From contig NW_020846678.1 in assembly GCF_003704095.1 (NCBI RefSeq), positions 186,158 to 250,000 of the forward strand: a stretch of DNA of 63,843 nucleotides, in the 5' to 3' direction. Position 1 is the stretch's first letter, and the number at the start of each line of letters is the position of its first letter. Positions 9,801-62,344 of this stretch are shown piece after piece. The translations under genes and the position numbers were made by a program. Source of the DNA: Pocillopora damicornis. Taxonomy: Eukaryota. Under the pieces are notes generated by a model. The model had not been told where the DNA came from. It saw only the letters and a list, made by a program, of their open reading frames with translations, and did no database searches.

Positions 9801-12800
9801 AAATTATTAGCAAGGCAAACCTCTGAAACATTTCTTTTTGATTCTCCTAAGCTGTCTTCCGGTCAGTGCTCGATCGTAAATCTGAAGACAAGCGATCCGC
9901 CCTCGGAAGATCCTTCTGTCCCGGGGCTTCTTCCCTGATATTGCCGGGTAGTTGGTAGCCAACTGAATCTTCCCGATGTTTCTCTGTGATATCGGTATGG
10001 CGTCATTCCATAGAGTGGCCAGACCCGTGACGTAGTCATAAGTTGCAGCTATGTAATTCCAAGTCTTTGGTTTGATTCTCCGGCTTGTGACAACGCTGAT
10101 GGTCTGCAGGGACCTCGGCACGAACTTCACCAGGAGAGTGCGAGGATTTTTCATCCACAGATGCACTCCCCATCCGCGAGGAAAATAGTGGAAGATTGGT
10201 CCGCTACCTTCGGGGTAGACCCACACAACGATGGTAAGGGAGTTCTTTGTATCCAGGCAACCCTTGTTTGGGAACAAGATGTAGCTGTTTGCGATGCCTT
10301 GAAGATAGTACGAACCCAATGGGAGGCCGTCAGGTCCTGGAGCCGGTTTAACGTTCACAAGTCTAGCAGCTCTGTTGCGGTTGATACTTATGTCTCTTCC
10401 TCGAGTGACGCCATTAAGAGGGTATATAACTCTGGCAGCTGCCGATCCAGTTACTGCAATAGAGAAAACGTAGTAAAAACTTCGGATGCCTTTTCTCTTG
10501 TCTTTTTAATCTAACGGTCACTTTCTCAAAAATCACGTCTGTCTACTGTCTTTCATTCAATCAGGGTACTATTGGAGACCGCAAAGCTGGTTCCCGACGG
10601 GCTGAAGAACCCCTTTTCAGAATCTTTTACGCCTTCCTGTCCCTTAATATTTAACTTTTACGCGAAAGCTCAACTCAAAGAATGAGTGGCAGAAATTGTG
10701 TTTGATGAAACTAAACAGTGACGAGGATATGAGAATGAAATTTGGGACGGCAATGATATAAATTCTCAAATTCCATCGCATAGAGTTATGGAATACCTGA
10801 ACAAGCTTTGACTCGCACAGCATTCAGCACCGCTGATAATGTCCTCAACGAAGCTGTAAACACATGGAGTCCATTTGTAGCGATCTGGTATAACTGTGTT
10901 TTGCTTGTCCTTCTACCAATAGCGACAACAAATACTTCAATTCCAATACGTTTTAAAACGCGTCCCGTCCGCTGTACACGGTCTACTGAGCGGGCACTTG
11001 CAAATACCACGAGCACACGCTTCCGTCCACATTGCCTTCTTCTTCTAAACAAGTACCTACGGGTATAGTGGAGAGCTTTTCCTATCCTGAGAGGACCTCT
11101 TTGTGGTCGAATCCTTCTTATGACTGAAAGCATGGAAGACGCCCTAAAGAAGCGGTTAAATCGGAACAAAGGCTTCGGTCTTGACGCGTACGTGACTACA
11201 CCGACGCGGGTTTCTTGGGTTGAAATTCGCAGTGAGTAGAGAAGTCGCGCTATGTTCCGGGTAAGTAGACGGAAAATTCCTCTGCCTGATCGACGCAAGG
11301 AGTAAGAGCTGTCTATCAGGAATCCTAGATCCATGTTTGCTCTGCAAGCTGCAAGAAAGAACATAATTTTAAAAATCATGTGTATATCTGTCATGCTGCG
11401 TGTAGGACAACTTAATTCTTAAAGAAAGCTTATACTATGGCTCTCCCCCTCTCCTTGCTTTGAAACCTTCAATCCACCTTTGTCGTAAACCTTGCTGAGA
11501 ACGTGTCAGATTTCAAAAGAAAAAAGGGAAATCAAAACTGAAGAACTTTTGTTACTAATGAAACTTTCGTTGCCCTACATTTAAAATTTTGAAACTGAGG
11601 GTAATCTTTGTTATGGTTCATAAAATAATTGTGCCTTGCACAAATGGAGATCGTGGCTACTTCTTTGCGGGTGAAGTGGAACAATCAATTCAGCTCCAAC
11701 GCTGAATTACCTAAATAATCATTAAAACTTACCATGACCTAGGTTTAACCTAATACTAAGATAATAAGAATAAGCCATCCTAGTCTACCAGAGATAAGTA
11801 CAACAGTCGCATGATTCAGAAGTAGTGTTATGCAGGGGTTTCAACAAGAAACTACTGAAACCCCTGGGGCAATGGCAAAATGCAAAACTGAATAGGAATA
11901 TTTTCCTAAGATGACCAACTAGAATTGATTAAGGTTTCGAGTACTTACGTCTTGGCGGGCCCGGTTTGGTAGGTGTTGGTGTGGGTGTTGGAGTAGGTGT
12001 GAAAACTTCTGTAAACAGAAGAATACATTTACAATTAATCAAACGTTATGAATATGTTGTAATGCCTACCTACCGATAGTTTATACCTCAAAGCAAGAAA
12101 CTGCTTAACGATCAAATATTCTGTGGACTTCCTTTAAAATCATACGGTACTAAAGCCATACTCAACGTAGCTGGAAGCAAGGTAGAAGTGTCGCCTTTAT
12201 TCAATATCAAATTAGTTTAGTATAAGTATCACTTTTATACAACTCTGAGCTCGTTATCCTTACTTGTCTTCAAACAAAGCCTCTTAGCCAATTGGATCTG
12301 TATTGGTCGCAGTGGTACGTCATAGATCTGCAAACATGTAATTCGTCCACGGAAATACCGCTTATCTCCAATCCGCGCACCCATTCTAGCAGGATAGTTT
12401 GTAGCCAGTCGAATCCTACCGATTCTTTTCCGGGCAACTTCTCTGTAATCGATATATAATCGGGCATATTCCGTACGCTGATTATAAGTAGCAGTGACGA
12501 AATTCCAGGCCTTGGGCTTGATAAGGTTGGTTTGCACGGCAGCTGTAAACTTTCGTGCACGAGTCACGAAACGAACAAGTAACACTCGTCGACGCACCAT
12601 CCACAAGTGGACACCAAACCCATCCGGTTTGTAATTAAAGATCGGTCCTACGGGGCCATCCGGATTTATCCAAGCCAGAATAGAGATTGAATTCCGAGCG
12701 TCTAATCGGCCTTTGTTCGGGAACTCGATGTAACTGTCAGAGCGACCTTTGAACCTAAATGAGCCACCTGGCCTTCCGTCTGGTCCTACGCCAGGGCGCA

Positions 12801-15800
12801 CATTTGCCATGCGCCCTGATGGGTTTTTACTTCTGCTGACGTCACGGGTGTTATATCGAACGTTTAAGGGATAGAAAGCCATGGCTGGAGGTAAAGCTAA
12901 AAGTAAGAGAAACAACAACAACAAAAATGATTTTGTGAGATGATCCAGGTTTCGCTACCATATAAACGAGACAGTGGGTGAATTGAAGGCAAGACTCATC
13001 AGAAAATTAAATCATCAAGTATAATCGAGGTGTACTAAAAAAAATCAGGCATTTACCTGTAGGTGGCTTTATGGGTTTAGTTGGAGGACCTGTAAATAAG
13101 TGGTAAGTAGTAAGAGTCATAGAATGTAAGAAAAATGTTAAAATAGATGCAAAAAACATCAAATTCTAACTTAATGAGCCAAAACCAATTATTACTTGTT
13201 GAACTAAAGTTAAGCCTTTTGACACCATTTTCAAAGAGACAAACGAAAAAGTTTCTTAATATCGTTGCATCAGATATTTCATGGTTTTTTAAGGTGCAAA
13301 AGGAATAGTTGGTTCGTACCTGGAACTAACAATGCCGATATCTTCAACTTCGCAGTACAAAAAGGCTCTTTATCAAAGACCTCAGTACTAAAGCTCACCT
13401 GGTTTATTGCAAAGGTTCTTGACTTTTTTAATCTGAGGTCCAGTCAGTGCCTTAGAGTAAACTTGCATACAAGCTATGCGCCCGCGGAATGTTCCACCCA
13501 TGTACGCAGTTGTCTTTGTCGCTAATCTAATGCGCTTGATATTCTGCGTTAGTACAGGTCTTGAATCCACCCATAGCGTAGCTATGCCTGCTCGCTGATT
13601 ATACGTACAACCGACGTAATTCCAGCGGCGTGGGTAAAGACGCCGTTTAATCAAAGCCCGCGTAGGCCGCCCGTTCCTCCGTTTGAACTGGACATATAAC
13701 GTGTCCGACCGGACCACCCAGAACCTTATCCCACGGAAGTATTCAAAAATAGGACCACGACCTATAGGAAATATCCAAGCGAGAAGTGTTATAGAGTCCT
13801 TAACATCCAATTTTCCCGAGTTGGGGAAACGGATGTAGCTGTTGCGACGACCAAAGAATTCCGTTGACTCGCCAGGTTGGCCGTAAGGGCCTGGGGCGTA
13901 TCTAATGTTGTAGCTTTTGCCTGGAATGTTTCTTCCTGAGCTGATATCACGTGCGCCAGTTTTGCTGTCCAGTGTGTAGACAGCAACGGGTTGAGGAAAG
14001 CCTAGTATGAAAAGAAACCAATGAGTAAACAGAACCCAAAAAACAGACATGCAAAGTCGGATCTTGATCGATACGGCTTTTCTACGGAACATCGAGAAGA
14101 TCAAACAAATGTAATCACTACGCCCAATCAGCAAAAAGCGAGAATGCGCAGGCATTACATACACACGGTGCGAATTTCACTTCCTAGACAACAGCGTATA
14201 GTGGAGAACAACAGATGCTATCCCGGAGAACTTTTAATAACAATTAATTGAAAAGTGCTCTTTATCGAATACCATTAAGCAAGCAGAAAGGAAGGTACTG
14301 TATATGATGTGAAGCGAAGTCTGACAAATGGCCGGAACTCCGCGTTCGTGATAAATAATAATACTCATTTATTATCGCTCATCGATTTTCTTTTTAGACT
14401 TACTTGGTTTTCTTGATGGAGACGGGGTAGATGGTCGTATGGTCGGCCGCGTAGTTATTTGAGCTGGACAAGTAATAAAAACGCTGTTAATACTCTGAGT
14501 ATAGTTTCAATATTTTCACAAAGTAGGAAAGTTTGATTGTAATAATATTTCTGTAGAGAGAAAAAAAAGAAATTTTGAAAATACCTCTGCACGCTTTCCT
14601 GACTATGCTTTTGACGATGCCATAAAGCGAATTAAAATTAACCATGTAAATATGACGAGAATCAGTGGCTATTGCCCTAAGCTCCTGGTTCCTCACTTGA
14701 GTGGTGACACCAACAGCGAACACTTCAATGCCAGCTCGATGTATCTGTAGACTTGGTATCTTCACACTATCATACGACGGCCCACTCATCACCGTTATCA
14801 GAACCCTCTTCCGTCGACTGCGTCTGAAAAGCGCTCCGACTGCGAGCTGTAAGGCCTTTCCTGTGCGTCTTGATCCTCGGGTATACCGCATCCTTCTAAT
14901 AGCTCGGTTCAGCCGGCGTGGATTCGTGTACCAGTTGAGTCCGAACTGCATCCGAGCAGACGAACCGTATACGATGACTCCTACACGTGCTCGGCTCCGA
15001 GAAATCGAAAATGATCGGGAAACGAGTTCTACGAACTTTTTTATTCGCCTGAAGTTGTTATGTCCAACTCTTCCAGAGGCGTCCAAGACAAAGCCAATAT
15101 CAATTGCTAGGTTGCAAGCTGGGGGAAATAAAAACGCAAGTTTTGAAGTAAGAACAATTGATCGCAAACACAATCTACAGTGGTAGATATTAGTGTCGTA
15201 AAAATACGTTGATATGAAGAAAACCTTCACTGCAATTTAAGAATGTTCAAAACTTTTTTCTTTTAAAAGATGAACGACCGAGAAATGGGAATAGATTCGA
15301 GGTAAAGTGGAACGGCATTCATTTCCTATCCGATAATTGTTCAGGAGATGTCACAGTTGTACCAGGCAGAGGCAAACATATCGATTCACTGCTTTTTAAA
15401 AACAAGATATTGTATGACCAACCAGCTCTGCCACAAAGATGAGCGATTTAACGACTTACCTGGAGGTGTCATAGGCTTTTTTGCTAAAAAAAGGAGCAAA
15501 AGTAAGAAAAGAAAGTCAAAAAAATTTAAAATATGGCTTATCTATACTTTAAAGCATGTTTCTTTCAAAAAATATATCGTCCCTTCTTTACAATGGTGTA
15601 ACAAGAAGGAGTTATTTGTGAAGAAACTACCTTCCTAGTTCATTCCTCAATCCACAAAGGCAGTATTGTAAGCAAAATTGGACTTCCTATATTTGTTGAT
15701 ATGATCGAAGAACAATTTTTCAACCAGCTATATCGAACATCTTGATCGCTTACCACCAGGAAAAGCTTCAAAATTTCAAGGTAAGTAGCTTCATGCGCAA

Positions 15801-18800
15801 CAGAATTCACTTCGAAAATATCGTTAAAGATTACAAAGGTTCATACATTTATTGCCCCTGATGCATGTTCTTGCCCCTTTACGCATGTAATTGCCCCTAT
15901 AGACATATCATTGGCCCTATAGGCATGTTATTGCCCCTGTATGCGTGTAATTGCCCCTGTGGACATATTACTGCCCCTAAAGGCATGTTTTGCCCCTGTA
16001 TACATGTTAGAGCCTTCGTATGGATGTTATGGCTTCTGTATGCATACAGTGAGTAAAATACAATTAGATCACTTACGCGGCACATATGGTGTGCAAGCCT
16101 TGTTTTTAATTACACCAAGAACAGTGCTTAGTCTCCTGAACCCAGCCGTGAACACATGCAGTGGACTGGAAGCCATTTGTTGCAGCTGAAGCCTTCTAAA
16201 CTTGTGACCAATCCCCAAAGAAAAGATTTCCACTCCTTTCCGTTTCAATCTCTCGGCGGGACCTATTACATTATCTTGCGAAATCCCGTCTGTCAAGATA
16301 ACAAGAACTGGCTTTCTGCCTTTTGACCTTCCTCGCGGAAATAAGTACCTGGATGGGACAAAGACCAAAGAATTATCAGCATACATATTCTAAACATTTT
16401 TCTCCCTACTATATAGATTTAGCCAAGCCTAAAAGCGGTGCTTGCATTTTTTTTCCCGCACGTCTCAAGAGCACAACGCCTTGCCCCGGCCAGGACTAGA
16501 ACCCGGGTCTTCCGACTCGGAGCCCACTGCTCTGACCACTGGACTACTGAACAAAGCCGTGGCGTGGGCGTGCCCGCGGTACAGTTGACCACGCATGTTA
16601 AAAGTGGCACCGTGTACGGTGGTACGGTCGTACATCCAAATTTTTTCCGCTTGATGGGTTGCTACTCTTTTGTATAATTATGGGGCTACGCTCTGCGAGC
16701 TCCGCTATTAAAACGATACAGGTTAGGAAAATTTCTTTACAGGATCAAGGCATTTTGTCTTTCGTTGACCATTTTCTTTTTTCTCACGAATTCTGCGTTT
16801 GATTAATTACACCTTTACAAGGAAAAATTAATTCCTGGTTGCTGTATATTACTTGGTTTAAACTAATTTGTCAAGTTTCCCGCTACATCTGAAGCTAAAT
16901 CTTGGTTTCTTTGGCATGAAGCGGCTAAGAGTTCTGGATGTGGTTGCTATTATAGCGGTACCGTTAAGTAAAGCGAGCGGATGTCAGCAATTTGCATTGT
17001 GACCGCTCATACTCCTTAACAACCGTTTCTTCCTTTCAGAGCCGCCATGTTTTTGTTTTGATCACAAGTGTAATTCGTTTAGTTTTTTCATTTATGAAAT
17101 CCTCCGGTCTTCCGCTTATCGGACTGGGCGGTTATCTCAAGAATAAAGACGTTCGGGAGCAGTCGCGATCGTACTCGAAAATAACGCGTCCCGTTTGTTA
17201 GGTGTGCATAATCATGTACTCTATCTTGAGAGGAAAGAGGATCTGTGTGAGGCGAGTATCTTGCCATAGAGCACAACACAGTGATCCCAGTAATGGGCAA
17301 GCAGAGTTTAAGGTGATAACTTTTAGACTAAATCGTCAGGAATCTTAAAAATAAGTCGATGCATACAGAAGCATCGTTAAGAATAAATATCCTTCAGAGA
17401 TCTATACATTACTTGTACTCAACAGCTTCACACACGTACCTTGAAACGTATGCAAGGGCTCTTCCCAGCTTTGTTCCTCCATATGGATATCTCACACGAT
17501 CAACTGCCTTGATAACGCTTGGCAGGGTGTAATATCGGTTAAAACGGAAGATCGGGTGTGGCCGAGTGGAGAACACTACCATACCCACCCGGGTCTGGCC
17601 CGCAGAGATAGGGAAGAAACTGATGAGAGTCTTGATAAAATCGAGAATGTGCATGAAATTTCCTTTGCCTCGGTTCTCTATGCTTCCAGAGCCGTCTACC
17701 AGGAACCCAAGATCGACTTTCAAGCGACATACTAGAAAGAAAAGAAAGTGGTTTGAAAACGCGCTGTCCCACTCAAGGCCAAATGATGAGAACCCTTTGC
17801 GATTTGGGCATCTTGATCACTTTTAATCGTTAATAAGCCAGAGAGATGAGAGGTCAATTGCTTACCTGGTGGTTTTGTTGGTGTTGGCTTTTTAATTGGA
17901 ATAGTCGGCGATGGGGTCACAACTTTAAAGAACAAACAAACAGATTAACATTAGCGACCAGACACTAACGACAATAATAATATATCAAAAAGGCCTGTCG
18001 GAAGATGAGTTGTGAACGAGTAACATTCCCCTGAGATCTAACCCAATGACCGTATATTTTTCGAGTCATTTTGCACCGGTCTAACAGAGCAAACTGATGT
18101 TAAACGTGCTGGTCCACTGAAGGCCAAATGACGAGATCATTAACGATCTGGGAAATATAACGCATCGAATGCCTCAAGCATTCAGATTGGAGTCCAAGTA
18201 CGATCCACTGTTAAGACGCTTCTAGACTTCCAAACTGGGTGATGGCTACGTTTTCAAACGTTCAGCTTGACAAATTTTTAACCCTAATGGATTAGGCCCA
18301 TGAATAATAATCATTAGCATGGCATTTTTGTTCATACTTGTGCGTACAACGGTGCTTCGTAGCTCTCGGGTGTTCACATTCATCCTTATATGATAAAATG
18401 TACTCTTGCAATGCGCCATGTATCAAAGGGTTTTTAATGAGTTTGTATTTAATAGTGCTATCACTAAAAAATGTTCTTATTCTCTGTTCTTTTAAACCCA
18501 AGAAATCATTAATGAAATTTGCCTGTTTTCGTTGTTTAGGCTGCTTATTTTCATAACCTAAATCACAACATAATAAAGGACTTAAAAAACGTTGCTTTTC
18601 AAAATTAANNNNNNNNNNNNNNNNNNNNNNNNNNNNNNNNNNNNNNNNNNNNNNNNNNNNNNNNNNNNNNNNNNNNNNNNNNNNNNNNNNNNNNNNNNNN
18701 NNNNNNNNTAGTAGGGAAAAGTTAACCGTCTGATAAATTGTTCAATTCTGGAAATTTGTGAAATGAATTTGCTTTTTTTCACAGTTTGCACAGCCCGAGT

Positions 18801-21800
18801 TGATCTCGGTTTCCTTATCGACGCTACCAGTCNNNNNNNNNNNNNNNNNNNNNNNNNNNNNNNNNNNNNNNNNNNNNNNNNNNNNNNNNNNNNNNNNNNN
18901 NNNNNNNNNNNNNNNNNNNNNNNNNNNNNNNNNNNNNNNNNNNNNNNNNNNNNNNNNNNNNNNNNNNNNNNNNNNNNNNNNNNNNNNNNNNNNNNNNNNN
19001 NNNNNNNNNNNNNNNNNNNNNNNNNNNNNNNNNNNNNNNNNNNNNNNNNNNNNNNNNNNNNNNNNNNNNNNNNNNNNNNNNNNNNNNNNNNNNNNNNNNN
19101 NNNNNNNNNNNNNNNNNNNNNNNNNNNNNNNNNNNNNNNNNNNNNNNNNNNNNNNNNNNNNNNNNNNNNNNNNNNNNNNNNNNNNNNNNNNNNNNNNNNN
19201 NNNNNNNNNNNNNACAGGGTGAAGAGACCAGCCGAGGCTCTTAAGGGAGCTGGTGTGGAGATATTCATGATTGGTATTGGCAGCATCGGGAGGACGAGTT
19301 TACTACGAGTTACAACTGACACCAAGCATGTATTTGTAGNNNNNNNNNNACAGCTTTTGTCCATTGTAAGAACACTAAAGGACAGGATTTGTTACTCACC
19401 AGGTAAGTTAACTTTGGAAATATACGTTGTACTGCCGTAGAATGATGAAATGCTAAGAAATTCTGATTAAGAGTATTTTGGTTTTATTGACTGAGTTGAT
19501 ATTTTAATTTAAACCCGTTGAAGAGTTTTTGCAAGCCGACCTTTCGAGCGTCAGGTCTTCGTCAGCTCCCTACGTTTGCCTGTAAACTCTTTAGGATGGC
19601 CAATAAACATAAGCAACTCAGNNNNNNNNNNCAAGTAATCTTGTAATACGCCACACTTCACCCGCTTCTGATTATGAGCGTTCGTTTGAGGGGGAAATTT
19701 TTCTTTCTTAAGCAAATTAATCCNNNNNNNNNNTGTCCCCTTGCCATTTTCAAAGATAAGATCAAGGTTTCACTTTGAAATTTAAAACTCAAAGGATCGC
19801 CTTTGGTTATCTTTGTGCAAAATTTGTTTGTACTTATCTTACCCCTGTTAACTCGTGAGACTTTGTTTTTCTCAGTTATTCGCCGAGGAGCAGTTGCAGT
19901 TTATCAGCTCAACAGCGCCTCCAAGAANNNNNNNNNNNNNNNNNNNNNNNNNNNNNNNNNNNNNNNNNNNNNNNNNNNNNNNNNNNNNNNNNNNNNNNNN
20001 NNNNNNNNNNNNNNNNNNNNNNNNNNNACAGGGTGAAGAGACCAGCCGAGGCTCTTAAGGGAGCTGGTGTGGAGATATTCACGATTGGTATTGGCAGCAT
20101 CAGAAGGACAAGTCTAGTACGAGTTACAACTGACACCAAGCATGTATTTGTCGTTGGGTATACACAGCTTTTGTCCATTGTAAGAACACTAAAGGACAGG
20201 ATTTGTTACTCTCCCGGTAAGTTTTCTTTTAAAAGAAATGAAATTGCACTGGTTTGAAAAAATTAATTGACTCTTATTCCCCTTAAAAAAAAGGAAAATA
20301 CTTTTAAAGTCGAAATGTTTCATACAATTTTAATTACATTAACTTTCCTGGGACTCGTATACCGAAATTATTTGAAAGACATATTTCCTAGCCTTTTAAA
20401 ATGGTAGCCAAATCACTTTTTCTCGGAACAGTTGAGATACAGCGACAAAGAAAACTTTAAATATTCCATGCAGTTATTTGTAGAGAAATCTCTTTTTATC
20501 TCTTTCCTTGCTTATGCGTGTAAAATTCAATTTCTAGTTATTCGTCGAGGAGCGGTTGCAGTTTATCAGCTCAACAGCGCCTCCAAGAACCGTGACATCA
20601 GTGGATACNNNNNNNNNNNNNNNNNNNNNNNNNNNNNNNNNNNNNNNNNNNNNNNNNNNNNNNNNNNNNNNNNNNNNNNNNNNNNNNNNNNNNNNNNNNN
20701 NNNNNNNNNNNNNNNNNNNNNNNNNNNNNNNNNNNNNNNNNNNNNNNNNNNNNNNNNNNNNNNNNNNNNNNNNNNNNNNNNNNNNNNNNNNNNNNNNNNN
20801 NNNNNNNNNNNNNNNNNNNNNNNNNNNNNNNNNNNNNNNNNNNNNNNNNNNNNNNNNNNNNNNNNNNNNNNNNNNNNNNNNNNNNNNNNNNNNNNNNNNN
20901 NNNNNNNNNNNNNNNNNNNNNNNNNNNNNNNNNNNNNNNNNNNNNNNNNNNNNNNNNNNNNNNNNNNNNNNNNNNNNNNNNNNNNNNNNNNNNNNNNNNN
21001 NNNNNNNNNNNNNNNNNNNNNNNNNNNNNNNNNNNNNNNNNNNNNNNNNNNNNNNNNNNNNNNNNNNNNNNNNNNNNNNNNNNNNNNNNNNNNNNNNNNN
21101 NNNNNNNNNNNNNNNNNNNNNNNNNNNNNNNNNNNNNNNNNNNNNNNNNNNNNNNNNNNNNNNNNNNNNNNNNNNNNNTTTCATTTTTTTGGTTTACTCT
21201 TGTTTGTAAAGGAAACATCTTTTTTAGATACATGCAAATTTTTTATTTATTAAATTAACTCTCAAGTCTTATTGAAACGGTAGTCACGCGATGTTTTCTG
21301 ATAATATTCCCACTTAAAATGTGTTTCAAAGGAATTTTTCTTGTGGGGAGAAGATGTTACCGCCATANNNNNNNNNNNNNNNNNNNNNNNNNNNNNNNNN
21401 NNNNNNNNNNNNNNNNNNNNNNNNNNNNNNNNNNNNNNNNNNNNNNNNNNNNNNNNNNNNNNNNNNNNNNNNNNNNNNNNNNNNNNNNNNNNNNNNNNNN
21501 NNNNNNNNNNNNNNNNNNNNNNNNNNNNNNNNNNNNNNNNNNNNNNNNNNNNNNNNNNNNNNNNNNNNNNNNNNNNNNNNNNNNNNNNNNNNNNNNNNNN
21601 NNNNNNNNNNNNNNNNNNNNNNNNNNNNNNNNNNNNNNNNNNNNNNNNNNNNNNNNNNNNNNNNNNNNNNNNNNNNNNGTTTAATACCGATCTCGTAATC
21701 CATTGATGAGATCACAGTGTACCCTTAGGTGTAATGGTAGAATGGGCATCCAAATTAAAAGTGTGCAAGCGTTTGTCGCCACTTAGACTTACTCTCACCT

Positions 21801-27800: not shown

Positions 27801-30800
27801 ACATTTATCTCATAAAGCATCTGAAAACTAACGAAAAAATAAATAACGAAGAAAACAGCCAGAAGCGCGGGAAAACGCAGGTAACTAGATTGTTATGGGT
27901 TTTAGCTTTGCATGTCGCTGATTGAGATGCTGGGGCGAGTTTTCTGAGCCAATCACAGAGCAAATCAAGACAAATCAAATGAAAGTTTTGAATACTTCCG
28001 ACTCTTCTTGAAAATGGCTCTATAAATTAATTAACTGCTGGGTTTAGTTAACCGCCTTTTCATATAACCTTACTTCTCTTGGACAGATGATGTTATAATC
28101 ACAGTCTGGGCCTTTAAGTTTTATCATTAGTCACTAAACATTATTCTGGTTACTTCCTGCAATTTGAAATTTCTCCATTTTGCTCTTGGGCTTGAAACTA
28201 AAATAATTGAATGAACTTGTTTTTGGGAGAGGTTTTATTGGACTGCTTAAACAGCTTCGTCACGGCAACTCTGGCAGCTATTATGATACACTTACTCGTC
28301 GGCGTTGGTACGGTCGCTGCAAAAGAAAAATAATTTACAATAAGCTGACTAATCATGACGGATAATCATAAATACACAAAACTTCAAACAAAAACAGCCA
28401 ACACGAAGATACAAAAAGCCGAATGAAGAGAGACAAGATATTATCCCCCTTATTCTCTGAAGTAAGTTTCGTTCTCAAGGAGTTACGTGTTCCACGCTAT
28501 TCATCCCTTACGACCAGGATTGAAATTCAATTGGATAAATTTCCGTATCTCTCGAAGTTTTCATAATTTGCGTCGATTTATTTTAATCTTCTATATTTCT
28601 TAGATGACTTTTTCAATGTTCCCTAGAAAATTTTCTTTCTCTTTAATTTGTAATATCCATTGTCTGCGTAGTTCAGTCGTGAACATATAAGTTATGCATG
28701 ACAGAAAAACTTGACTTCACTCACTGTGGAAACTCGCATCGAAGATACCATCGGCTTAAGTTTCAATAACTTAATAAATATTAGACGAGTACTACACGAT
28801 GATAAACTCACGTCTAGGCGTTGGTCGTGTAGGGCGACACACTTTCTCTTTGATGGCCTGAATAACTTTTCCAAGCCGACTAAATCCAGCCGCAAAAACA
28901 TTACGAGGGCTTGATGCAATCATCTGTAGCTGACTTCTGCTGAATCGCGAGCCGATTCCAAGGGCGAATAGCTCCACTCCCTCTCGCTTAAGGCGTGAGG
29001 CAGGTCCTCGAACACCATCCGAGGAAACACCATCAGATAAGATAAGCAGGGTGCGTTTACGCCCTTGTATGGCGCGCCTTCGGAACAGCACACGGCGGAC
29101 ATATCTGAGAGCTCGTCCAATAAAACTTCCCCGTCCTCTCGGCAGATATCTGGCAAGAATAACAGAAATGTAAATCGCAGCATTTATATTTCCGCCAGGA
29201 AACGTTACGTTTTTATTGGCTGGAGGAAAACGAGTTTAGGGCGCGGAACAAAGTTTCGTCCAGTCGAAATACGAAAAAATAGGCAACATGACACCAGTCC
29301 TAGACAAACCTTATACGGTTGATGGCTCTGACAATATGCGCTCTTGAACCATATCTGTTGAATCCAAACATGAGTCTCGGTCGAGAGGAGAACAGCATCA
29401 CACCTACTCGTGTTTGTCGCGTGGACAGAGGGAAGAAGCTGACCAAAGATCTCACGAAGTCAATGACTTTTCTGAAGTTCCTTCGCCCGACGCTGCTGGA
29501 ACCATCGACAAGAATACCAAGATCCACACGAGATCTGCAAACTAACATAGAAAATGATTAATTTGTAGTTTCACCTGTAACTGATTGCCCCATAACACTC
29601 TGAAATATAAAACCCCCTCGCTGGTAGCTAAAGGGCATTAATTTTCTCTAGCCCTTTCTTTGTGCTTTGTTGGCGACGACTGATCCCAATCCATACCGCC
29701 TGAAAACCAAGTGATCCAACCGAAAAACCACCGAAACCCCTAAAAAGTCTCCTGATGGAGTTTGAAAAATAAGAATTAAAGTTTCATGTTTAGGAAACAG
29801 GCAGTTCAAGGGGAATGGAGTCGCCCTCCGCACTAAACTCTTTTGTTACAACTCCATAGTAGACTAATACACATTAATTTTCATGGTTGCTTAAAGTAAT
29901 TACGCTCCTGCTATCAGAAACAATAATGCGCAGTTATGCGATATTCATAAACAACCATGATTCACTGAGCAAATTAAGATAGATTTTCCAAAAGGTTTTT
30001 AAAAAATTATGCTATGGAGAAGATCTAAAAATGTAAAAATATGTGACGGATACCTGGACTTGGAGTGGCCGGGGGTTGTGGAACTAGAATGAAAAAGAGA
30101 AATTCAGAGTTACATAAGTAAAATAATGAAATACACTTGTAAGAAAAGAAGTTGGAATAATTCAATAAAATGTACCAAATCTCTTAATTGCTGGTAACAC
30201 TTACTTGGTCGAAAGCATTTCTTTTTTAAGGCGATGATCTGAGGTCGCGTGAGTGCCACGTTGAACAGTTGCAGACACGCGATTCGTCCACGAAACACAT
30301 GACGAGAGTGAGGCTTACGACCGATCATTATGGGATAATTGGTGGCCAGCCCACTTGGGAATCGGCCAACATTTCTTTGAACAATCGGGTAGCCGTTACA
30401 CCAGAGAGTCGCCAAACCGGTGCGGTGGTTGTAACTAGCTGCAACGTAGTTCCATGTCCTGGGTTTGAGCCCGCGACCAATCAAAGCTTTCACTCTGCGG
30501 CCCGTCCTACTCCTTGGAATAAGCCGAAAGTAGAGTTGAGTGAGACGGGTTGCCCACAGATGGACTCCCCATCCTTTGGGATTGAAATGAATCAAAGGTC
30601 CTGGAGATTCAGGATACACCCAGAGTATCATCGTCAGCGAGTACCGTGTGTCAAGGCAACCATTGTTCGGGAGAACGGCATAGCTTACTCTCGTTCTTCC
30701 CCTAATTCGAGTTCTTCCTGGGAAGTAGTAAGCTCCCTTCGGGTGTCCGTCAGGTCCCTGGATGTAGGAAACACCTACAAGTCGTGCGGGAGGGTTCTTG

Positions 30801-33800
30801 TATTGACTGATGTCACCGCCTCGTACTGCACTTGTGAAGGGATACGTGGCTACAGCTCCTCTAGAAATGATGACTAGAAGAAAAGTGAAATGAATTAATA
30901 TATCTACGCTTAATTGCTATTGATTGATTTTCTCTCGTTCTATCCCAACTCTGCAAAGTGGTGTCATTCCAATGCTTCAATATTGACAAGTTAAATTGAA
31001 CACTATGACTTCAATTTTTCCATTCTATTTGAAGGTTGAAGACAGTCGATGTCTGTCTGTCTGTCTGTCTGTCTATCGGTCGGCCTGCCGGTTGGTTGGT
31101 CGGTCAGTAAGCCAGTCAGTCAGTTAGCAAATAGAGTACTAGGACGAAAAGGTCTCAATTGTAACTCCAAAATTATGTAGTCTTACCTGGGGAGTGGCAC
31201 ATCCTGTCCTTGATGGTTCTCACGATAGTCAATAAGCTCTGTGCATTCTTAACAAACACGTGGAACCGGTCTGTAGCGATTTTCCTCAAGTATCGCACAC
31301 TAACCCGACCAAGGCCGACTGTGTACACTTCAATACCGGCAGCGTGCAAGATTCTTGCCGGACGCACCACATTGTCACGTGTTTCACGAGCAGTTACCAG
31401 TACGAGTACTCTTCTCCTGCCGCATGTGGGTTTGCCTCGGAACATATGTCTCTTAACATACATCAGGGCTCGAGCTGTATTTCTTCGCCTTCCACGCAAC
31501 AAACTCAACTTTTTAAGCTCTCGGTACACTTGCGCTCTACTGTACGATTTGCCAAAGCGGAAAACCAGCCGCTGGCTTGAAGCGAAAAGGGTTAGAGCTA
31601 CTCTAGTTTGCGATCTCTGGACATCAAATCGCCTGACCATTTCCTTTACGTATTCGATAATGCGCCGGAAAGTGACGGATCCAGTTCGGCGAGAGCCATC
31701 GATAAGGAATCCCAGGTCGATGCGGGCTTTGCAAACTTAAAATCAAAACAAAATATGTGTAAAATGTCAGTTTACTTTGAGCACGGTTGGAACAACTGTA
31801 GCACATCTCGTGACGAACTTAGTAACGAAGGAACTTTTTAAGTCAACCTATTAAAAGCGTTTTCTGGAACCACTGAAATCAATGTAATCCATATCAATCA
31901 TTATACCGAGATAAGAACAAATTGATAAATAAATGAACAGATAAAACACATTAGGAAAAAAAGCAAAAGTATGAGGAACGAAGGATCTTTCAGAGCACGA
32001 CACCTTAACGCAGAACTACAGGGATACTCCATGATTTTTCTCTGAGGTGAAAGAGTCTTGGTAACAATTTGTTACTTAAATCATTTTGCAATTCCAAAGA
32101 GAAACCTGAGCGTTTGAGCACAAAGTCTTCGAATGAGAGTTAAGAACGGAATCATTTGTTTTGCTTAAAAAAAAAAACATTTTCATTTACCTCTCGGAGG
32201 CGGAGTTGTTGGTTTGGTGACCGGCGTCGTTGGCTTAGGAACTTGAAATAAAATTAATACACAATTTTATGTAAATATAATTTGTTTTAATACCTTAAGA
32301 TCTACAATGACTAGTAGTCGGGCGTAGGCGGTGCTTTCTTTAACCTAACATAGATTCGGCCAACTGGTTGGTTTCCAGTAAAGCTTGCATCGAGAGAAGA
32401 AAATATTAGCGAAGCGACTTCAAAGTTTCAAACGCAAAAAGCGGAAGGCTACCGACACTGTCAAAAAGTTGGTTGGCAAACAATGCAATAGTAGACTTCT
32501 TCTTCCGCAGTTCAATTGAAACAACTCCCAGCCTAAGAGGAGAGGACTCAAAATCAGACCTGAGAATGCAGTTCATCAACATTACCTGGCAAAAAGCACT
32601 TCCTTTTAGCTTCAAAGATCTGTTTTCTTGTCAACGCGACGCTGTAAAGCTGTAAGCAGAAGATCCTTCCTTTGAAATAGTTGCGACTTCTCCTGATGGC
32701 TCCCAGTCTGATAGGATAGTTTGTGGAGAGACGCACTCTACCCAAACGCCGTCTTGCTACCGGCTGAGAATTCAACCACAGCGTAGCAATACCAGATCGT
32801 TCGTCATAAGTAGCACCAACATAATTCCAAGCTCGGTACTTTAACCGATTGCTTCTCAAGGGGCGAGTTGTGCGTCCGTCGCGGCGCATAAAACGAAGAA
32901 ATAGCTGCCGATAACTCGTCATCCACAGATGAACGCCGTAGCCATTCGGATTGTAGTTTACAATTGGTCCCTTGCGGCCATTATGGTACACCCAGATTAA
33001 GAAAGTTATGGAATACCTCGCGTCCAGTTTCCCACGGTTGGGGATTTCCACGTAGCTGTTAGGTCTTCCGTAAAATTCCGTAGAGCCGTCCGTACGACCA
33101 TCAGGGCCTTGTCCATATTTCACACCGACAATTCGTGCGCTCGGATTTCTTCCTCGACTGATTTCTCGACCTGCTCGCACACGATCGAATGGGTAAACAG
33201 CCATAGTACTTGGGAGACGAACTGAAGTTAAGATGAACACCTTTCAGAAACACTAATTTCGTGTATAGTTGAAGAGAGGTAAACGAATCGAAATCTTTCT
33301 TTGAAAAGATCGAATTGAAATTTCGAGAGAATTTAAAAGTAAAAACAAAACTTAAAGTAATTTTCATTTCTTCATATAACCTCAAATGATATACGGCATT
33401 TAAATCGAGCAACAGCTGACCTACCTCTTGGGGGTGTTGGTACTGCAAAAAAGCAAAGGAAGGGAAAATCAGATAACATGAGAAGTAAATATATTTTAAA
33501 TTAAGTAAGGTTCAATTATCACCTTATCTTTTACGTTGTATGGACACAGGATTAATTTCAAAGATGGAATAACTTGAATTTTAGTGTGCAAGCAGGCTAA
33601 GAAATTGAATTGGATATACACTTTTTTCAATTGAAAATATTGGTCTTTACAAGAGCAATGCTTACTTGGAGTGGGCACTGGCTTCTGGCAGGCTTTGCTT
33701 TTAATCTTCTGTATAACTTTCCCGAGCGATCTAAAGGACGCCGTAAATATATGATTGTTATCGGTAGCAATCTGCCGTAACTGAGATATTCTATATCCTC

Positions 33801-36800
33801 GTCCGATGCCAAGAACGAAGATCTCACATCCTGCAACACGAAGACGACGCGCCGGTCCACTTACACGGTCCTGGGAGATGCCATCGGTAAGCACGACTGT
33901 CACCCTCTTTCTATTAGACGCTGGTCTTCCTGGGTACAAATACCGTCGGGCAAATGACAAAGCTTTTCCAATGTAGGTACCTCCTCGGGGATACCTTAGG
34001 TTCTCTATAGCTCTCAAGATGGCCGCCTTCGTATAGTATTTATTAAACCTGAAGATAGGTATAGCTCGGCGAGTGTAGAGGATCACACCAACATGAGTAT
34101 CTCGGCGAGAGATTGGAAAGAAGCTCACAAAAGACTTGATAAAGTTTAACATACGGGCAAAGTTTCCTCGGCCGTAACGTTCAATACTGGAGGAACCGTC
34201 GATAAGGAAGCCCAGATCAATAGGTACGGCACAAACTAAAGAACGAAAAAAGAAGATAAATTAGGGGCAACTAAAAACAGGCAGATACCAGAGAGACTGT
34301 CTAATTGTTATGTTAAAGTTTTCTCACTATTTTGATTGATGGAGTCCATTGAAAGGCGCCCGAAATGAACTGTTCATTATGTGTTTTGATAAACCCGATC
34401 TTTCTGGGTGGACGAACGGTTTTAAATACGACACGTGTACACTGATTAAAAATACAAACAGAAAGGTTTTGAAGAGACTCAGACTTAAGTAATATTTTGC
34501 CTCAACATTTCTGGCCAATTGAAAGTATTTGAAATTCCATCACAATAAAAGGCTTTAAAATTCAGCAAATCAGAAGCTCTTTCAAGATTTTACCTGGCAA
34601 AACCATAACGGAGAAAAGACGCTTAAAATAGTCAAGTATTACTAAAATTCTAGGTTGGGTACATCTCTGGCCTTTCGGAAAATAACGACAAAGCTGTACA
34701 ACAAACCTGGTCGAGGAGTTGATGGTTTCTGAGTTGGTGCGGTGGGTACAACCACTGGAAAGTTTAAAGAAACATTATATTAATAGAATTCTCAAAAACT
34801 AGTAGACACCTTTACACCTTAAAAAGGTCGCTTGAACGAGAGCTATAGCATTCGGCTGACAAATCATCATTTGACGCTGTTGATTGCTTACGCTCAGGTT
34901 GTTAGGAGGTGAATCACGATCACTGAAGGGAGCTTTTTTATAAACTACTCTCATCTGCAGGATTACACCATATTATCGACAATTGTTTTTACACCAATTC
35001 GGTTCAAAGTATTTACTAAACATCAATGTCTACCAAGACACCTCGTGCGATATGACTTATGGCGACAACAAACCGTCGCCGTGGAAATCGTTTCCAAATA
35101 CTCGAGTTCAACAGTATTCCACGATCATAGATAATCATTTTCGAGGTAACTTCACAGCTGAGTTCAAAGACTCTTGTACAAAAGGTGACGTGATAGATGG
35201 TTCATGTTTATCATTGCGCTTTTGAACGCAATTAGACTGTAATTTCTTCTCCTACCTGGTCTAAAGCACTGCTTTCTCCTAGCGATAATCTGTGCTCTCG
35301 TCATAGCCACATTATAAATTTGCAAACACGCAATACGTCCACGAAATATGCGACGATCTCCAGGCCGCTGACCAATGACTATGGGGTAGTTCGTGGCTAC
35401 GCCCAAAGGAAACTTTCCGATATTCCTCTGAGACACAGGAAGCCCATTCAGCCAAAGCGTTAAAAGTCCTGTGCGGTGGTCATAAGTAGCACTGATATAG
35501 TTCCAACTGTAAGGCTTCAAGCTCTGGGTGGTCAGTGGTTTAACATTATGCCGCGAGCCCTTTCTAGGCATTAAGCGTAAGTAGAGCTCGTTTGGATGAG
35601 TGAGCCACAAGTGAAGGCCCCATCCCTTCGGATTGTAGTGCACAATGGGACCGGGCTTCTCCGGGTAAATCCAGGCAATTATCGTAATAGAGTAACGAGT
35701 GTCCAGACATCCGTTGTTTGGGATCAGAGCATAGCTGCCTCTTAATCGTCCTCTTTGTCTTCGCATCCCTGGGAAAAATAAAGCTCCCTGCGGATGTCCA
35801 TCTGGGCCTTGAATGAATGAAACGCCAACAAGCTGTGCTGTTGGATTCCTGAACCTACTGACGTCACGTCCGCCAGAGGTGCTTGTAAATGGATAGAAAC
35901 CGACTGCACCACCGGAAACAATAACTAAAAAATTGAAAAAAAAAAAAAAGCGTTGTTAAAGGCGAAACTCACGGGGCGACAACGTGTTAGGAACAAGTCG
36001 TAAAGACAAACAGTTTCGAATAATTTAGGACATTTTTAGACAAAATTTCTGTCCCCGAAAAATAAATTTGTCTCCGTCACAGATTGCAAATATTCAAAAT
36101 CTGCACGATGATATGCGCGGCGATAAAAGAAGTAGCACTGACTTTTATTAGGAATAGTGTCCATGAGAGAGAACTGTGGAACGAGTTTTTACCGTGTGTT
36201 TCCCAGCATTATACTATTTATGAATTATTTTCGACGGCCATATTTCTGCCACACATATCTCTTGAATTTTCTATTCGCAGACACTCGATGAAACGCAGTG
36301 GAGCAGAGAATGTGCAATGCATGACATAACGAAAAACCGATTCTCACTGCTGAGACAAAGTAAAATATTTAGATACCTGCTTTGCTAAGTTTTAAAAATG
36401 CGGAAATTGTTTGACTACCAGAATCCTACTGACCTGTCGAACTGCATATTTTATCTTTGATAATCCTACTTAATGACACCAACTGCCTCGCACCAACTCT
36501 AAAAATATGACTTGAGATTGTGGCAACACGAAGCAACGATTGTCTCCTCACTCTTCCAATACCAACAGCGTATAATTCTACACCCGAGGAAAATAATCCT
36601 CTCGCAGGCCTTGTGACATCATCGCGGGACTCTCCAGTTGCCAGAACAACAAGAACCCTTCTTCGCCCGCAGCGTGGTCTACCTCTAAATAGGTAGCGAG
36701 CTGTGTAAGTCAAGGCTCTTCCAAGGTATCTGCCAGTGCGACCGATGGGTCGGATCTGATCAATCAGTCTGCTTATTTGACTTGGATTGTAATTTCTTCT

Positions 36801-39800
36801 AAATCCCAAGAGGAGCCTAACTCTAGAGGTGTACAGTACAATGCCAATTCTAGCTTTCAGCCTGGAAACTTCAAATAACCTGACTGTGTCCTTTAAGAAT
36901 CTCAGGATGACACGGGAGCTGTACCTGACGCGAGACGCATCCACCAGGAAGCCGAGATCGATACGCTGCCTGCAAACTAACAGAGAAATAATAGAAGCTT
37001 AGGGAAAAGCATTTGCAAATCATCTTCAGTTTTCTTAAACTTTGTTAAAATTGTTAAAATAAGCATGATGAATATATTCTATCATGATAGGCCTACCACG
37101 TGGCGCTGGTTTTGGACGAGGACCAGGAGGAGGAGTAGGAGACGGAACTGCAAGAGAAGAGCTATCTGTTAATACCTTCGTGATCATAAAAAAGTTATCT
37201 TTAAGTCCTATGTACATGAGCTGTGTCATAAATTTAAACCTGTGTACCAGCATACATATACAGCTTTCTTATTCAGATTGTCATCAACGAAAGCTCAATG
37301 TACAAACCTTAACCTTTGTTATTTATTATTTAGAAGCATTTAAACAGAACGTGGTCAGCACAAACCTGGTAGAAAGCATCTCTGTTTAGCCGCGAAGATC
37401 TGTTTCTGGCTGAGTGCAGCACTGTATACCTGCGCACAAAAGAGTCGTCCTCGGAAATAGCGCCTGTCACCTTCCCGTGCTCCGAGTCTCACGGGATAAT
37501 TTGTCGACAACTTTATTCGCCCTAAACGTCTAATTCCGACGGGTACTGAGTTGATGTAAAGCGTCGCCACGCCCGTTCTGCCATCGTACTTTGCACCGAC
37601 GTAATTCCACGCCTTGTATTTCATTCTTCCACTTGTGATCGGTGACGTGAATTTCCCTGAGCGTCGCACAAAGCGCGCGAAAAGTTGGCGCCGCCCTGTC
37701 ATCCAGACGTGCACGCCAAAGCCTCGTGGATTGTAATTGAATATGGGTCCTGATATCCCTGCGTGGTACACCCAGATGAGAATAGTTATTGAGTATCTTG
37801 TGTCCAGCTTTCCTGTGTTAGGAATTTCGACGTAGCTGTTCCGTCGTCCATAGAAACGTAAGGATCCATCACGACGGCCGTCCGGACCTTGAGCCGTGCC
37901 TACGCCCATTAGAGTGGCCGAGGGATTTTTAGTTCGGCTGATGTCTTTACCCCGCCTCGGACCGTCCATAGGGTACACGACTACAGAATCTGGAATATAA
38001 ACTGCAAGATAATTGTAACAGAAAATAAATTCCAAAGTCAGAGGAAAATCTTCTCGTCTTAGTATCAAATTTGCTGTGACACGACCTGAGTGACCTCAGT
38101 GTTAGCGGATCGGAATCACTGTAACAAAATTTCAACTGGTAGCAACAATCAAAAGAAGATTATGATATAGCTCGTTTAAGAGCTGGTTTGAAATGATACA
38201 TACTTCTTGTTGGTGTAGGCTTAATTGGCCCTCCTGAAACGGAAGAAAAGATATTTAATACTCCGCCCTGATAAAGCCCTTGTGCCATATCAAGCTAAAC
38301 TTGAATAAGTCTTCCCTTTCCTTCAGCAGCAAGGATTTTTATGAACTTATATCTCTGTTAGCCTGCGAGTACTCTTCTCTTATTTTCTTTACTTCTCGCA
38401 GGAAATTCCTATACATTTTCTGAACTTGTGTCTTTGTTTCTCATCCCAGAGAAATATCAGTACAACATTCATGTACTAACCTGTAGGTTGGACAAGCTGA
38501 CAGATTTTGGACCTTATCATCTTTGATAAAGCAGCCAACCCTCTGAACGATACAACAGAAACATGGTTCCTGTCTGTGGCAATCTGCAACAACTGTCGTC
38601 TCTTCAGCGCTCTTCCGATACCAACGACAAAAACCTCAACGCCTTTAGCCTTCAACAGCGACGCCTGACGCCCGACGCGGTCCTGTGATATACCATCCGT
38701 GAGCATGATCAAGACGCGCTTGCGATTCCGTTGCCTACGTCTGCCAAATAAGAATCTCCTGGTGTAAGCCAAAGCCTTGCCGATGTAAGTCTTTCCACGA
38801 GGGTACCTAATGCTGTCAATAGCCTGTTGCACGTGCGTGATGGTGTTCAGCTGGCCAAATCTGAACAGTGGAAATGGATTGGTGGAGAAGAGCACTGCAC
38901 CCACACGCGACTGTGTTCTTGAGACGGGCAGCGTGACCACAATGGATTTTACGAAGCGAAGCATAAGCCTAAAGTTTCCTCGACCGTGATATTCGATACT
39001 TCCAGAGCCATCAATTAAGAAACCAAGGTCTACAACTGTTCTACAGACTGAGAAAGCAAAGTAACGAGTAAAATAAGTCAGTCCGCCCCTTGGTCAAATC
39101 CTAATTGAAGGTTACGGGTCAAGTAACGGTCACAGTCACCCACCCACTAAGAGAAGGCCGTCCTATTTATTAGTTTTACTGGAGCTTCTTCTGAACGTTC
39201 TACAAGAGCTACAGGAAGTAGTTCTGGTCACAGTTATCTCATTCACTGTTGCTACTGGATGGGGATGAACCATCTAAAATTCCCTGATAAGCTTTTGACT
39301 ACATCATAGATACCAGTCAGGGGTGGAACTTGAGAAGAGAACTTCCTCGAACGAAGCTTAGACACAACAATTATTGGGCCCACTTATTTGTCACTGTCCA
39401 AAGAAAAAGGTCAGAACATTGCCAAAGGACTTTGAAATCTTAAGATAAAAAAAATTCACATTTAGGACTGGCGTTCAGAAAGTAAGGAATCACGTGGATA
39501 GCCAAAAGTAGGCGCAAACGCTCATTCGTCAAATCTAAAAGAAACTTTCAAGGTTGGCCGACATATGACAAATTTCCATAAGAACGGACCATTGCCTGGT
39601 CGAGGAGGTGATCAAGGTATTCAATACCCCTTTTCTATAAGGTTGTTTTGAGGATTTTTGTTTAATTGGATATTATCAGAATTACTTTTGCCGTAGTCGT
39701 TGCCCCCCCCCAAAAAAAGAAAACACACTTTGATAAATCGTACCTGGTGGGGGAGGTGTTGGTGGCGGTTGTCCTGTTGATAGAAAAAGAGAAAGAGTGA

Positions 39801-62072: not shown

Positions 62073-62344
62073 GCCCCCTTACCACATTGGGTAAAGACAA
62101 CAAAAGTAAAAAAAACCATTCTAGAATCCCATGCTGCCTAGAAAAGATCGATGTGGAAAAACCCAACTAGCACAATTCAATAACTTCTCAAATATATTAT
62201 TAATAATATTAATTATGGCTGAAATAATGCAAATCTATATGTTCCTTTCTTGCTGTGGTCGCTTAGGAACAAATTTTAGACGCAAAACGGATAGGGGAGG
62301 GTCTGTTATAGTGTTGAAATAAATGCCCTTTCTCCAACTGTTCA

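What the first reader, a model, noticed from the sequence alone, without database searches (positions are those of the whole stretch)
9821..36976. Linker-less vWA->LamG junctions coincide with one extra Cys in each partner: predicted disulfide-locked di-domain
Every domain junction in the assembled minus-strand array has a linker micro-exon except V4->L6, V6->L8 and V11->L14 (the gap-region V->L pairs also show none). Exactly those vWAs carry an extra Cys (PRCGRRR, PTCGRRR, RQCGRKR). Exactly those LamGs carry GCLDT where the others have GKLD/GRLD/GPLD/GGID. The three-way correlation holds in 3 of 3 cases. Inference: an inter-domain disulfide makes a rigid V-L unit within an otherwise flexible chain.
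Basis: partly seen in the sequence, partly recalled or inferred. Interest (0 to 1): 0.8.

Follow-up and report, generated by a model that had tools for sequence, protein, structure and literature searches.

The report
Cysteine-paired vWA–LamG cassette without linker
In a giant, very basic coral matrix-type protein built of vWA and LamG-like domains joined by proline/threonine linker micro-exons, one conserved vWA–LamG pair type lacks the linker and carries one extra cysteine in each partner, which fits a disulfide-stapled two-domain unit but has not been shown directly.

Summary
On the minus strand every domain is one phase 1-1 exon. Nearly every junction holds a P/T-rich phase 1-1 micro-exon with good splice sites. 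V4→L6, V6→L8 and V11→L14 hold none. Those three vWAs alone carry a Cys two residues before strand β4 (xCGR[RK]R). Those three LamGs alone carry NxGCLD.

The 3-of-3 count is not three independent events. The starred vWAs fall together in one, weakly supported, group of the tree; the GCLD LamGs split into two neighbouring groups, and a single group is not rejected. So the pattern may be one inherited cassette.

The cassette is strictly kept in seven loci from other corals. All 16 V*→L* junctions lack a linker exon, against 70 of 79 other junctions that have one. All 64 L* and 22 V* homologues keep their Cys. The connecting peptide is conserved.

Single-domain AlphaFold models put both Cys in loops. 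The vWA Cys lies on the face that holds the domain termini.

An inter-domain disulfide is the most economical reading (about 0.55), but it was not tested. No joined di-domain model could be made and no coordinates are returned. RNA reads were unavailable. None of the assembly gaps touches the three junctions. The gap region holds V*/L*-type pieces on the opposite strand.

The parts
36434..36976 (-). V4* exon: vWA domain, MIDAS-degenerate, 3 Cys (1, 102, 177)
   Evidence: Pfam PF00092 E 4.9e-23; splice sites; Cys map; AF2 pLDDT 91.8
36669..36671 (-). extra Cys102 codon of V4* (PRCGRRR), two residues before strand beta4
35925..36433 (-). V4*->L6* intron, 509 nt, no micro-exon candidate of any composition
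   Evidence: no conserved island against L003/L004
35256..35924 (-). L6* exon: Laminin_G_3 / ConA-like jelly roll, 3 Cys (72, 199, 219)
   Evidence: Pfam PF13385 E 7e-17; splice sites; AF2 pLDDT 94; Foldseek
35707..35709 (-). extra Cys72 codon of L6* (NNGCLDT), in loop 68-78
31187..31735 (-). V6* exon, extra Cys104 (codon 31424-31422, PTCGRRR)
30874..31186 (-). V6*->L8* intron, 313 nt, no micro-exon candidate
30205..30873 (-). L8* exon, Cys72 (codon 30658-30656, NNGCLDT); also a non-conserved Cys158
10797..11348 (-). V11* exon, extra Cys106 (codon 11031-11029, RQCGRKR)
10454..10796 (-). V11*->L14* intron, 343 nt; only a weak 12-nt non-P/T candidate
9821..10453 (-). L14* exon, Cys65 (codon 10259-10257, NKGCLDT)
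37097..37147 (-). P/T linker micro-exon L5->V4*
   Evidence: counterpart in L003 and L012
34707..34754 (-). P/T linker micro-exon L6*->V5
   Evidence: counterparts in L002, L003, L004
32191..32241 (-). P/T linker micro-exon L7->V6*; conserved with L004 18675-18728
   Evidence: blastn island 92.6% over 27 nt; sequence
30054..30083 (-). P/T linker micro-exon candidate L8*->V7
14404..14463 (-). 19-aa linker micro-exon V10->L12, near-identical in L002 and L013
11949..12008 (-). P/T linker micro-exon L13->V11*
   Evidence: counterpart in L013
9694..9723 (-). P/T linker micro-exon L14*->L15, peptide identical in L013 10930-10959
8032..8109 (-). P/T linker micro-exon L15->L16, needed to avoid a TGA at the direct junction
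20028..20608 (+). gap-region cassette on the opposite strand: V*-type C-end (to 20216), 321-nt intron without P/T exon, L*-type start (20538-20608), bounded by N

Best explanation
V4-L6, V6-L8 and V11-L14 are copies of one ancient two-exon cassette.
- It joins a MIDAS-degenerate vWA domain directly to a LamG-like (Laminin_G_3) domain.
- The splice goes through a conserved split Val codon and a conserved 11-13-residue connector.
- The proline/threonine linker micro-exon that separates almost all other domains of this giant polycationic coral protein is absent.
- Each partner has one additional exposed loop Cys.
- The vWA Cys sits on the face that carries the N- and C-terminal Cys clamp and the exit to the next domain.

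The most likely role of the two Cys is an intramolecular V*-L* disulfide. It would fix the two domains into one rigid composite bead.

Shown: the cassette, its Cys, the missing linker exon, its conservation, and the loop positions. Inferred: the bond itself and the rigidity.
For: Sequence and gene structure.

Cross-species evidence in seven loci from other corals:
- Every NxGC[LMV]D LamG is directly preceded by an xC[GA]xRR vWA, with no mixed pair.
- 0 of 16 V*→L* junctions have a P/T micro-exon candidate. Other V→L junctions have one in 18 of 20 cases, and remaining junctions in 52 of 59.
- 64 of 64 L*-type and 22 of 22 V*-type database homologues, down to about 47% and 39% identity, keep the Cys.
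- The junction is conserved as C-x-S-P | V-I-[LIV]-S-R-G-A-V-A-x-Y-P-F with a fixed spacer. It is 13 aa in most copies, 12 in two, and 11 in the L14 type.

Structure:
- AF2 V4* (pLDDT 91.8) places Cys102 between helix 84-94 and strand 104-112, next to strand 4-12, which starts after Cys1. Helix 168-178 ends at Cys177.
- AF2 L6* (pLDDT 94) places Cys72 in loop 68-78.
- V* has lost MIDAS residues: DASRV or DGSRR instead of DxSxS, and ATG, TAR or ASA instead of TDG. This fits a structural rather than metal-dependent ligand role.

The ML LamG trees place the Cys-less L3 next to L14* (95/92, SH-aLRT 94). Its partner V2 also lacks the Cys and has a long P/T tail plus a linker exon. That would be a second, coordinated change.
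Against: - No di-domain model and no coordinates, so the Cys-Cys distance is unknown.
- No RNA evidence that V*→L* is spliced directly.
- The starred vWAs group together, with weak support (82/55 including V11; 72).
- AU tests do not reject a single L* clade (p 0.128). They also do not support placing V2 with V* (p 0.18 and 0.24). The correlation may therefore rest on one evolutionary event.
- Other domains of the same array carry odd Cys without an obvious partner. Examples are FKRC in downstream vWAs, AGCEIF in V5, VGCTY in L2 and L12, and RKCPTG in L15.
- L8 in this genome has a fourth, non-conserved Cys.
- Three Cys cluster on one face of V*, so the actual pairing could differ.
Confidence: 0.55

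Rival explanations
1. The two conserved extra Cys are used for intermolecular disulfides, or for bonds to other matrix partners. They would polymerise or cross-link the protein rather than bond to each other. The missing linker is a separate inherited feature of the cassette.
For: Both Cys are in polar or basic exposed loops. The best solved relatives of the vWA are the vWA domains of collagen VI alpha3 and of von Willebrand factor. From general knowledge, such matrix proteins multimerise through disulfides. Nothing measured here distinguishes cis from trans bonding.
Against: The two Cys never occur singly in 16 cassettes and 86 homologues. They always sit in neighbouring domains joined by a short conserved connector. 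Cross-linking sites would not need that arrangement.
Confidence: 0.25
2. The correlation is only shared ancestry. One ancestral V-L unit happened to have these residues and no linker exon, and it was then duplicated. The Cys are free thiols or have unrelated roles.
For: V* falls in one group and L* in neighbouring groups of the trees. A single origin is not rejected. Other lone Cys exist in the array.
Against: Strict retention of both Cys, of the split Val codon and of the connector argues for selection on the junction. This holds across paralogues that are only about 40-50% identical, and across several coral genomes. Exposed free Cys are unusual in secreted proteins (general knowledge).
Confidence: 0.12
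3. An inter-domain bond exists but with another pairing. The loop Cys of V* bonds to Cys1 or Cys177 within the vWA. The displaced terminal Cys then bonds to the LamG Cys.
For: Cys1, Cys102 and Cys177 all lie at the same end of the vWA fold. They sit at the starts of the adjacent strands beta1 and beta4 and at the end of the last helix (plus the established vWA topology).
Against: The N- and C-terminal Cys pair is kept in all vWAs of the array, including those without the extra Cys. The canonical clamp is therefore the default.
Confidence: 0.08

Closest known systems
Collagen VI alpha3 N-terminal vWA array (PDB 9han, 4igi, 6snk)
   Same: Best solved sequence relative of V4* (E 2.6e-57 summed over repeats). 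It is also a beads-on-a-string array of vWA domains in a matrix protein. The extra Cys of V* aligns to the loop before beta4 of these domains.
   Different: It has no LamG-like domains in the array and no Cys at this loop in the aligned repeats shown. It has no P/T micro-exon linkers like those here, and it is not polycationic.
von Willebrand factor A1/A3 domains
   Same: vWA fold with an N- and C-terminal Cys pair at the base of the domain. The disulfide clamp itself is from general knowledge.
   Different: VWF A domains have no third Cys in the alpha3-beta4 loop and are not followed by a jelly-roll domain.
Mussel proximal thread matrix protein 1 (PDB 4cn8)
   Same: Second-best solved relative (E 1.5e-10). 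It has tandem vWA domains in an invertebrate extracellular fibre or matrix protein.
   Different: It is a vWA-vWA pair, not vWA-LamG. I did not verify how its domains are held together.
FACIT-type collagens with a vWA domain followed by a TSPN (LamG-like) domain
   Same: A vWA is directly followed by a ConA-like jelly-roll domain in an extracellular protein. This is recalled from general knowledge and was not tested here.
   Different: No collagen triple-helix region was seen in this window. The repeated alternation, the extra Cys pair and the extreme basic charge are not features of FACITs as far as I know.
Laminin_G_3 / ConA-like lectin jelly rolls
   Same: Pfam PF13385 hit. The AF2 model is a confident beta sandwich. 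Foldseek finds ConA-like jelly rolls such as clostridial neurotoxin Hcn subdomains and a GH43 accessory domain, at TM about 0.6-0.74.
   Different: Identity is only 12-18% and there is no sequence match to any solved chain. The fold resemblance implies neither toxin nor glycosidase function.

Membership tests
vWA domain (PF00092) | Profile match above the curated cut-off | tested here: met
   V4* 82.7 bits and V11* 103.2 bits against a cut-off of 23.8
vWA domain (PF00092) | Alternating beta-alpha Rossmann-like fold | tested here: met
   AF2 pLDDT 91.8; six strands alternate with helices
vWA domain (PF00092) | Intact MIDAS (DxSxS ... T ... D) | tested here: not met
   V4* has D-A-S-R-V and A-T-G. 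V6* has D-G-S-R-R and T-A-R. V11* keeps DxSxS but has A-S-A in place of T-D-G.
Laminin_G_3 / ConA-like (PF13385) | Profile match above the cut-off and a beta-sandwich fold | tested here: met
   52-62 bits against a cut-off of 27.6; AF2 pLDDT 94, all-beta; Foldseek probability 1.0 to jelly rolls
Inter-domain disulfide-stapled di-domain | One Cys beyond the intradomain pairs in each of two adjacent domains | tested here: met
   V* has 3 Cys and L* has 3 Cys; L8 of this genome has a fourth, non-conserved Cys
Inter-domain disulfide-stapled di-domain | The two Cys are kept or lost together across relatives | tested here: met
   16 of 16 cassettes have both. 64 of 64 L* and 22 of 22 V* homologues keep theirs. 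There is no mixed pair. Few independent events underlie this.
Inter-domain disulfide-stapled di-domain | Both Cys surface-exposed and facing the interface | tested here: inconclusive
   Both lie in loops of confident models, and the vWA Cys lies on the face with the termini. No coordinates are returned, so exposure and facing were not measured.
Inter-domain disulfide-stapled di-domain | SG-SG within bonding distance, or chemical detection of the bond | not testable with these tools
   A joined V+L sequence has no reference and was left out. No database gene model with the cassette was found among the best 150 representatives.
Linker micro-exons | Phase-compatible exon with splice signals, conserved in position and peptide between species | tested here: met
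   For example, 14463-14404 matches L002 10672-10731 and L013 3388-3447.
Linker micro-exons | Presence in transcripts, and direct V*->L* splicing | not testable with these tools

The most novel reading that the evidence does not exclude
The array may toggle junctions between two states during evolution. One state is a covalently stapled, linker-less vWA-LamG composite bead. The other is a free pair separated by a P/T (probably glycosylated) spacer. On this reading the V2-L3 pair is a former cassette that lost both Cys and gained a spacer together. The stapled bead would be a new composite module of a scleractinian polycationic giant matrix protein, with a binding or mechanical role distinct from either domain alone.
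Probability: 0.3. Interest if true: 0.55.

Novelty: new variant of a known kind. Interest (0 to 1): 0.45.

Why it matters
If the staple is real, it defines a structural unit of an undescribed family of giant, extremely basic (domain pI about 11-12) vWA/LamG proteins conserved among stony corals. It would be a clean natural example of how a modular matrix protein mixes rigid and spaced junctions by exon design. It also gives a small, expressible di-domain of about 400 residues as an entry point for biochemistry on a protein too large to handle whole. It does not touch a long-standing open question, and the protein's function remains unknown.

Tried and rejected
- Di-domain fold: the joined V+L protein has no reference, so this step was left out.
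- I looked for a database gene model spanning the cassette. The word search found only single-exon ORF calls. The full HMMER search of representatives listed long LamG proteins, but none with GCLD or the vWA Cys. Desmophyllum pertusum gene models cover the vWA alone.
- The PDB sequence search for L6* found nothing significant.
- The ESM Atlas search added nothing beyond Laminin_G_3.
- Three literature searches found no description of a vWA-Laminin_G_3 array in corals and no accessible PTMP1 structure paper.
- AU tests meant to establish a second independent event (V2-L3) were inconclusive.
- blastn between species recovered only one micro-exon. The others needed the splice and phase scan.
- I considered a furin-type cleavage reading of RCGRRR and rejected it. 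P4 is not Arg, and the motif runs into strand beta4.
- The direct-splice stop at L15→L16 could have meant a gene end. I rejected that in favour of the micro-exon at 8109-8032.
Full report
**What is there.** The minus strand of the window carries an array of single-exon domains. Pfam assigns them to VWA (PF00092) and Laminin_G_3 (PF13385). Reading 5'→3', the order is V1 L1 L2 V2 L3 L4 V3 L5 V4 L6 V5 L7 V6 L8 V7 L9 L10 V8 L11 [gaps] V9 V10 L12 L13 V11 L14 L15 L16 V12 L17 L18 V13. The array continues beyond the window on the same contig. Every domain exon begins ag|NN and ends N|gt, so all are phase 1-1. All domains are extremely basic, with pI about 11-12.

**Which organism.** The genome has 234,350,878 bases in 4393 contigs. 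Related DNA comes from a Tara metagenome scaffold. One relative is named as Desmophyllum pertusum. So this is a stony coral. From memory only, the size and contig count match the public Pocillopora damicornis assembly.

**Gaps first.** The N runs inside the finding's span (18609-20027, and further runs to 21937) lie between L11 and V9.
- None of the three junctions, their exons or their introns contains N.
- Across the gap region the recognisable coding pieces lie on the + strand. There are two V*-type C-terminal pieces, one V N-terminal piece and two L*-type starts.
- Continuity of the minus-strand array across the gap, and the numbering after it, are therefore not established.
- One + strand junction is fully visible. 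The donor follows 20216, the intron is 321 nt, and the acceptor precedes 20538. It shows a V*-type end and an L*-type start with no P/T exon between them.
- The positions of the two Cys fall in N. I did not try to fill them.

**The observation.**
- The three vWAs V4, V6 and V11 have a third Cys in xCGR[RK]R (codons 36671-36669, 31424-31422 and 11031-11029).
- The three LamGs L6, L8 and L14 have NxGCLDT (codons 35709-35707, 30658-30656 and 10259-10257).
- All other LamGs in the window have K, R, P or G at that position.
- A scan for phase 1-1 exons with a pyrimidine-rich acceptor and a reasonable donor finds a P/T-rich micro-exon at nearly every other junction. It finds none in the three V*→L* introns.

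**Are the micro-exons real?** They are not scan artefacts.
- One (32241-32191) is the only intronic island that blastn finds conserved with another coral locus.
- Many have positional counterparts with the same phase and a similar or identical peptide in loci L001-L004 and L012-L014.
- L15→L16 would create TGA if spliced directly, but reads through with the micro-exon at 8109-8032.

- Other extra Cys exist at other positions: V1, V5, V12, L2, L8, L11, L12 and L15, plus FKRC in downstream vWAs.
- Three junctions have only weak linker candidates.

**Independence.**
- In trees of the domains, the starred vWAs fall together in one group. V4/V6-type support is 100/99. Including V11 it is 82/55 and 72.
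- The L6/L8-type LamGs form a strong clade.
- L14 groups with the Cys-less L3 next to that clade (95/92; 94).
- An AU test does not reject a single GCLD clade (p 0.128).
- It also does not reject V2 joining V* (p 0.18 and 0.24).
- A second, coordinated change in V2-L3 is suggested but not secured. There both Cys are absent, the vWA has a long P/T tail, and a linker exon is present.

**Conservation.** This is the stronger evidence.
- All 64 database homologues of the L* type keep the Cys, down to about 47% identity.
- All 22 of the V* type keep theirs.
- In seven loci from other coral assemblies, every GC[LMV]D LamG is directly preceded by an xC[GA]xRR vWA, with no mixed pair.
- Over the window and these loci, 0 of 16 V*→L* junctions have a P/T micro-exon candidate. 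Other V→L junctions have one in 18 of 20 cases, and remaining junctions in 52 of 59. Fisher's test gives 4e-8 and 4e-12, not corrected for relatedness.
- With direct splicing the split codon is Val in 15 junctions and Ala in 1.
- The connector is conserved in sequence and length: 13 residues from the last vWA Cys to the aromatic of YPF in most copies, 12 in two, and 11 in the L14 type.

**Structure.**
- AF2 of V4* with an alignment of homologues gives pLDDT 91.8. Cys102 lies in the loop between helix 84-94 and strand 104-112 (beta4). Cys1 precedes strand 4-12 (beta1). Cys177 ends the last helix.
- By the established vWA topology, beta1 and beta4 are neighbouring parallel strands. Their starts, and both termini, lie on the face opposite the MIDAS. 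So the extra Cys sits where the next domain leaves.
- V* domains have lost MIDAS residues.
- AF2 of L6* gives pLDDT 94. Cys72 lies in loop 68-78 between two strands. Cys199 and Cys219 are nearly invariant across all LamGs.
- Foldseek finds only generic ConA-like jelly rolls at 12-18% identity. That says nothing about function.
- The tools return no coordinates. The joined V+L sequence has no reference, so I left the joined fold out. The key distance was therefore not measured.

**Reading.**
- The cassette is real, old and under selection as a unit.
- An intramolecular V*-L* disulfide that turns the pair into one rigid bead is the most economical explanation (about 0.55).
- Trans cross-linking is the main rival (about 0.25).
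- Mere inheritance with free thiols is less likely (about 0.12), given the invariance.
- An alternative pairing within the three clustered vWA Cys cannot be excluded (about 0.08).

**Comparison with the known.**
- The vWA is closest to collagen VI alpha3 and VWF A domains, and to mussel PTMP1.
- The LamG has no solved sequence relative.
- I found no paper describing this vWA/Laminin_G_3 array in corals.
- Earlier notes of this scan describe the same stretch as a beads-on-a-string protein (s1-765089). They also describe a related giant coral matrix gene with a cationic LamG array elsewhere in the genome (s1-760913). I used these as context only.

Noticed in passing
window 18715-20608, + strand: Inside the gap-ridden stretch, the V*-type and L*-type pieces lie on the strand opposite to the array. 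There are two cassettes, with L*-type starts at about 19875-19927 and 20538-20608. This is either an inverted duplication or mis-oriented small contigs in the scaffold.
   Followed up: partly
window 8600 / 7430 and 8032-8109: Direct splicing of L15 (donor t|gt) to L16 (ag|ga) gives TGA. The 78-nt P/T micro-exon between them restores the frame. This is internal evidence that the linker exons are used.
   Followed up: partly
L005-L007 (G000:C3313:156200-186199, minus strand): Downstream vWA domains of the same array carry a different extra Cys in helix alpha1 (F[KR]RC[LI]xF). Sometimes they carry a further Cys in strand beta4 (for example VVICMTDG). The following LamG has no matching Cys.
   Followed up: no
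window 33667-34233 versus L003 5355-7514, L004 11265-13490, L012 13852-14480: V5 is one exon in this genome, but its orthologues in other corals are split in two at about profile position 100. V7 and V9 are split at a similar place in this genome. This points to intron gain or loss within the family.
   Followed up: no
all domain exons, e.g. window 36435-36974, 35257-35922: Every vWA and LamG domain is extremely basic, with pI 10.9-12.0 and 30-43 Lys+Arg against 4-11 Asp+Glu. The whole protein would be a polycation with probable mucin-like P/T spacers.
   Followed up: partly
window 42974-43534 and 41633-42256 (V2, L3): L3 is the nearest relative of the Cys-bearing L14 in the trees but lacks the Cys. 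Its partner V2 lacks the vWA Cys, shares the lost TDG Asp with V*, and has a 10-residue P/T tail plus a candidate linker exon (42643-42602).
   Followed up: partly
window 62318-63025, + strand; 57843-59297, minus strand: LamG-like fragments lie on the + strand near the window end. A three-exon vWA lies about 9 kb upstream of V1. Whether these belong to the same gene was not examined.
   Followed up: no
window 5856-5882: The only candidate micro-exon between L16 and V12 encodes a short Gly-Pro-Pro-Gly-Pro-Ser-Gly-Lys stretch with a weak donor. It is collagen-like but too short to interpret.
   Followed up: no
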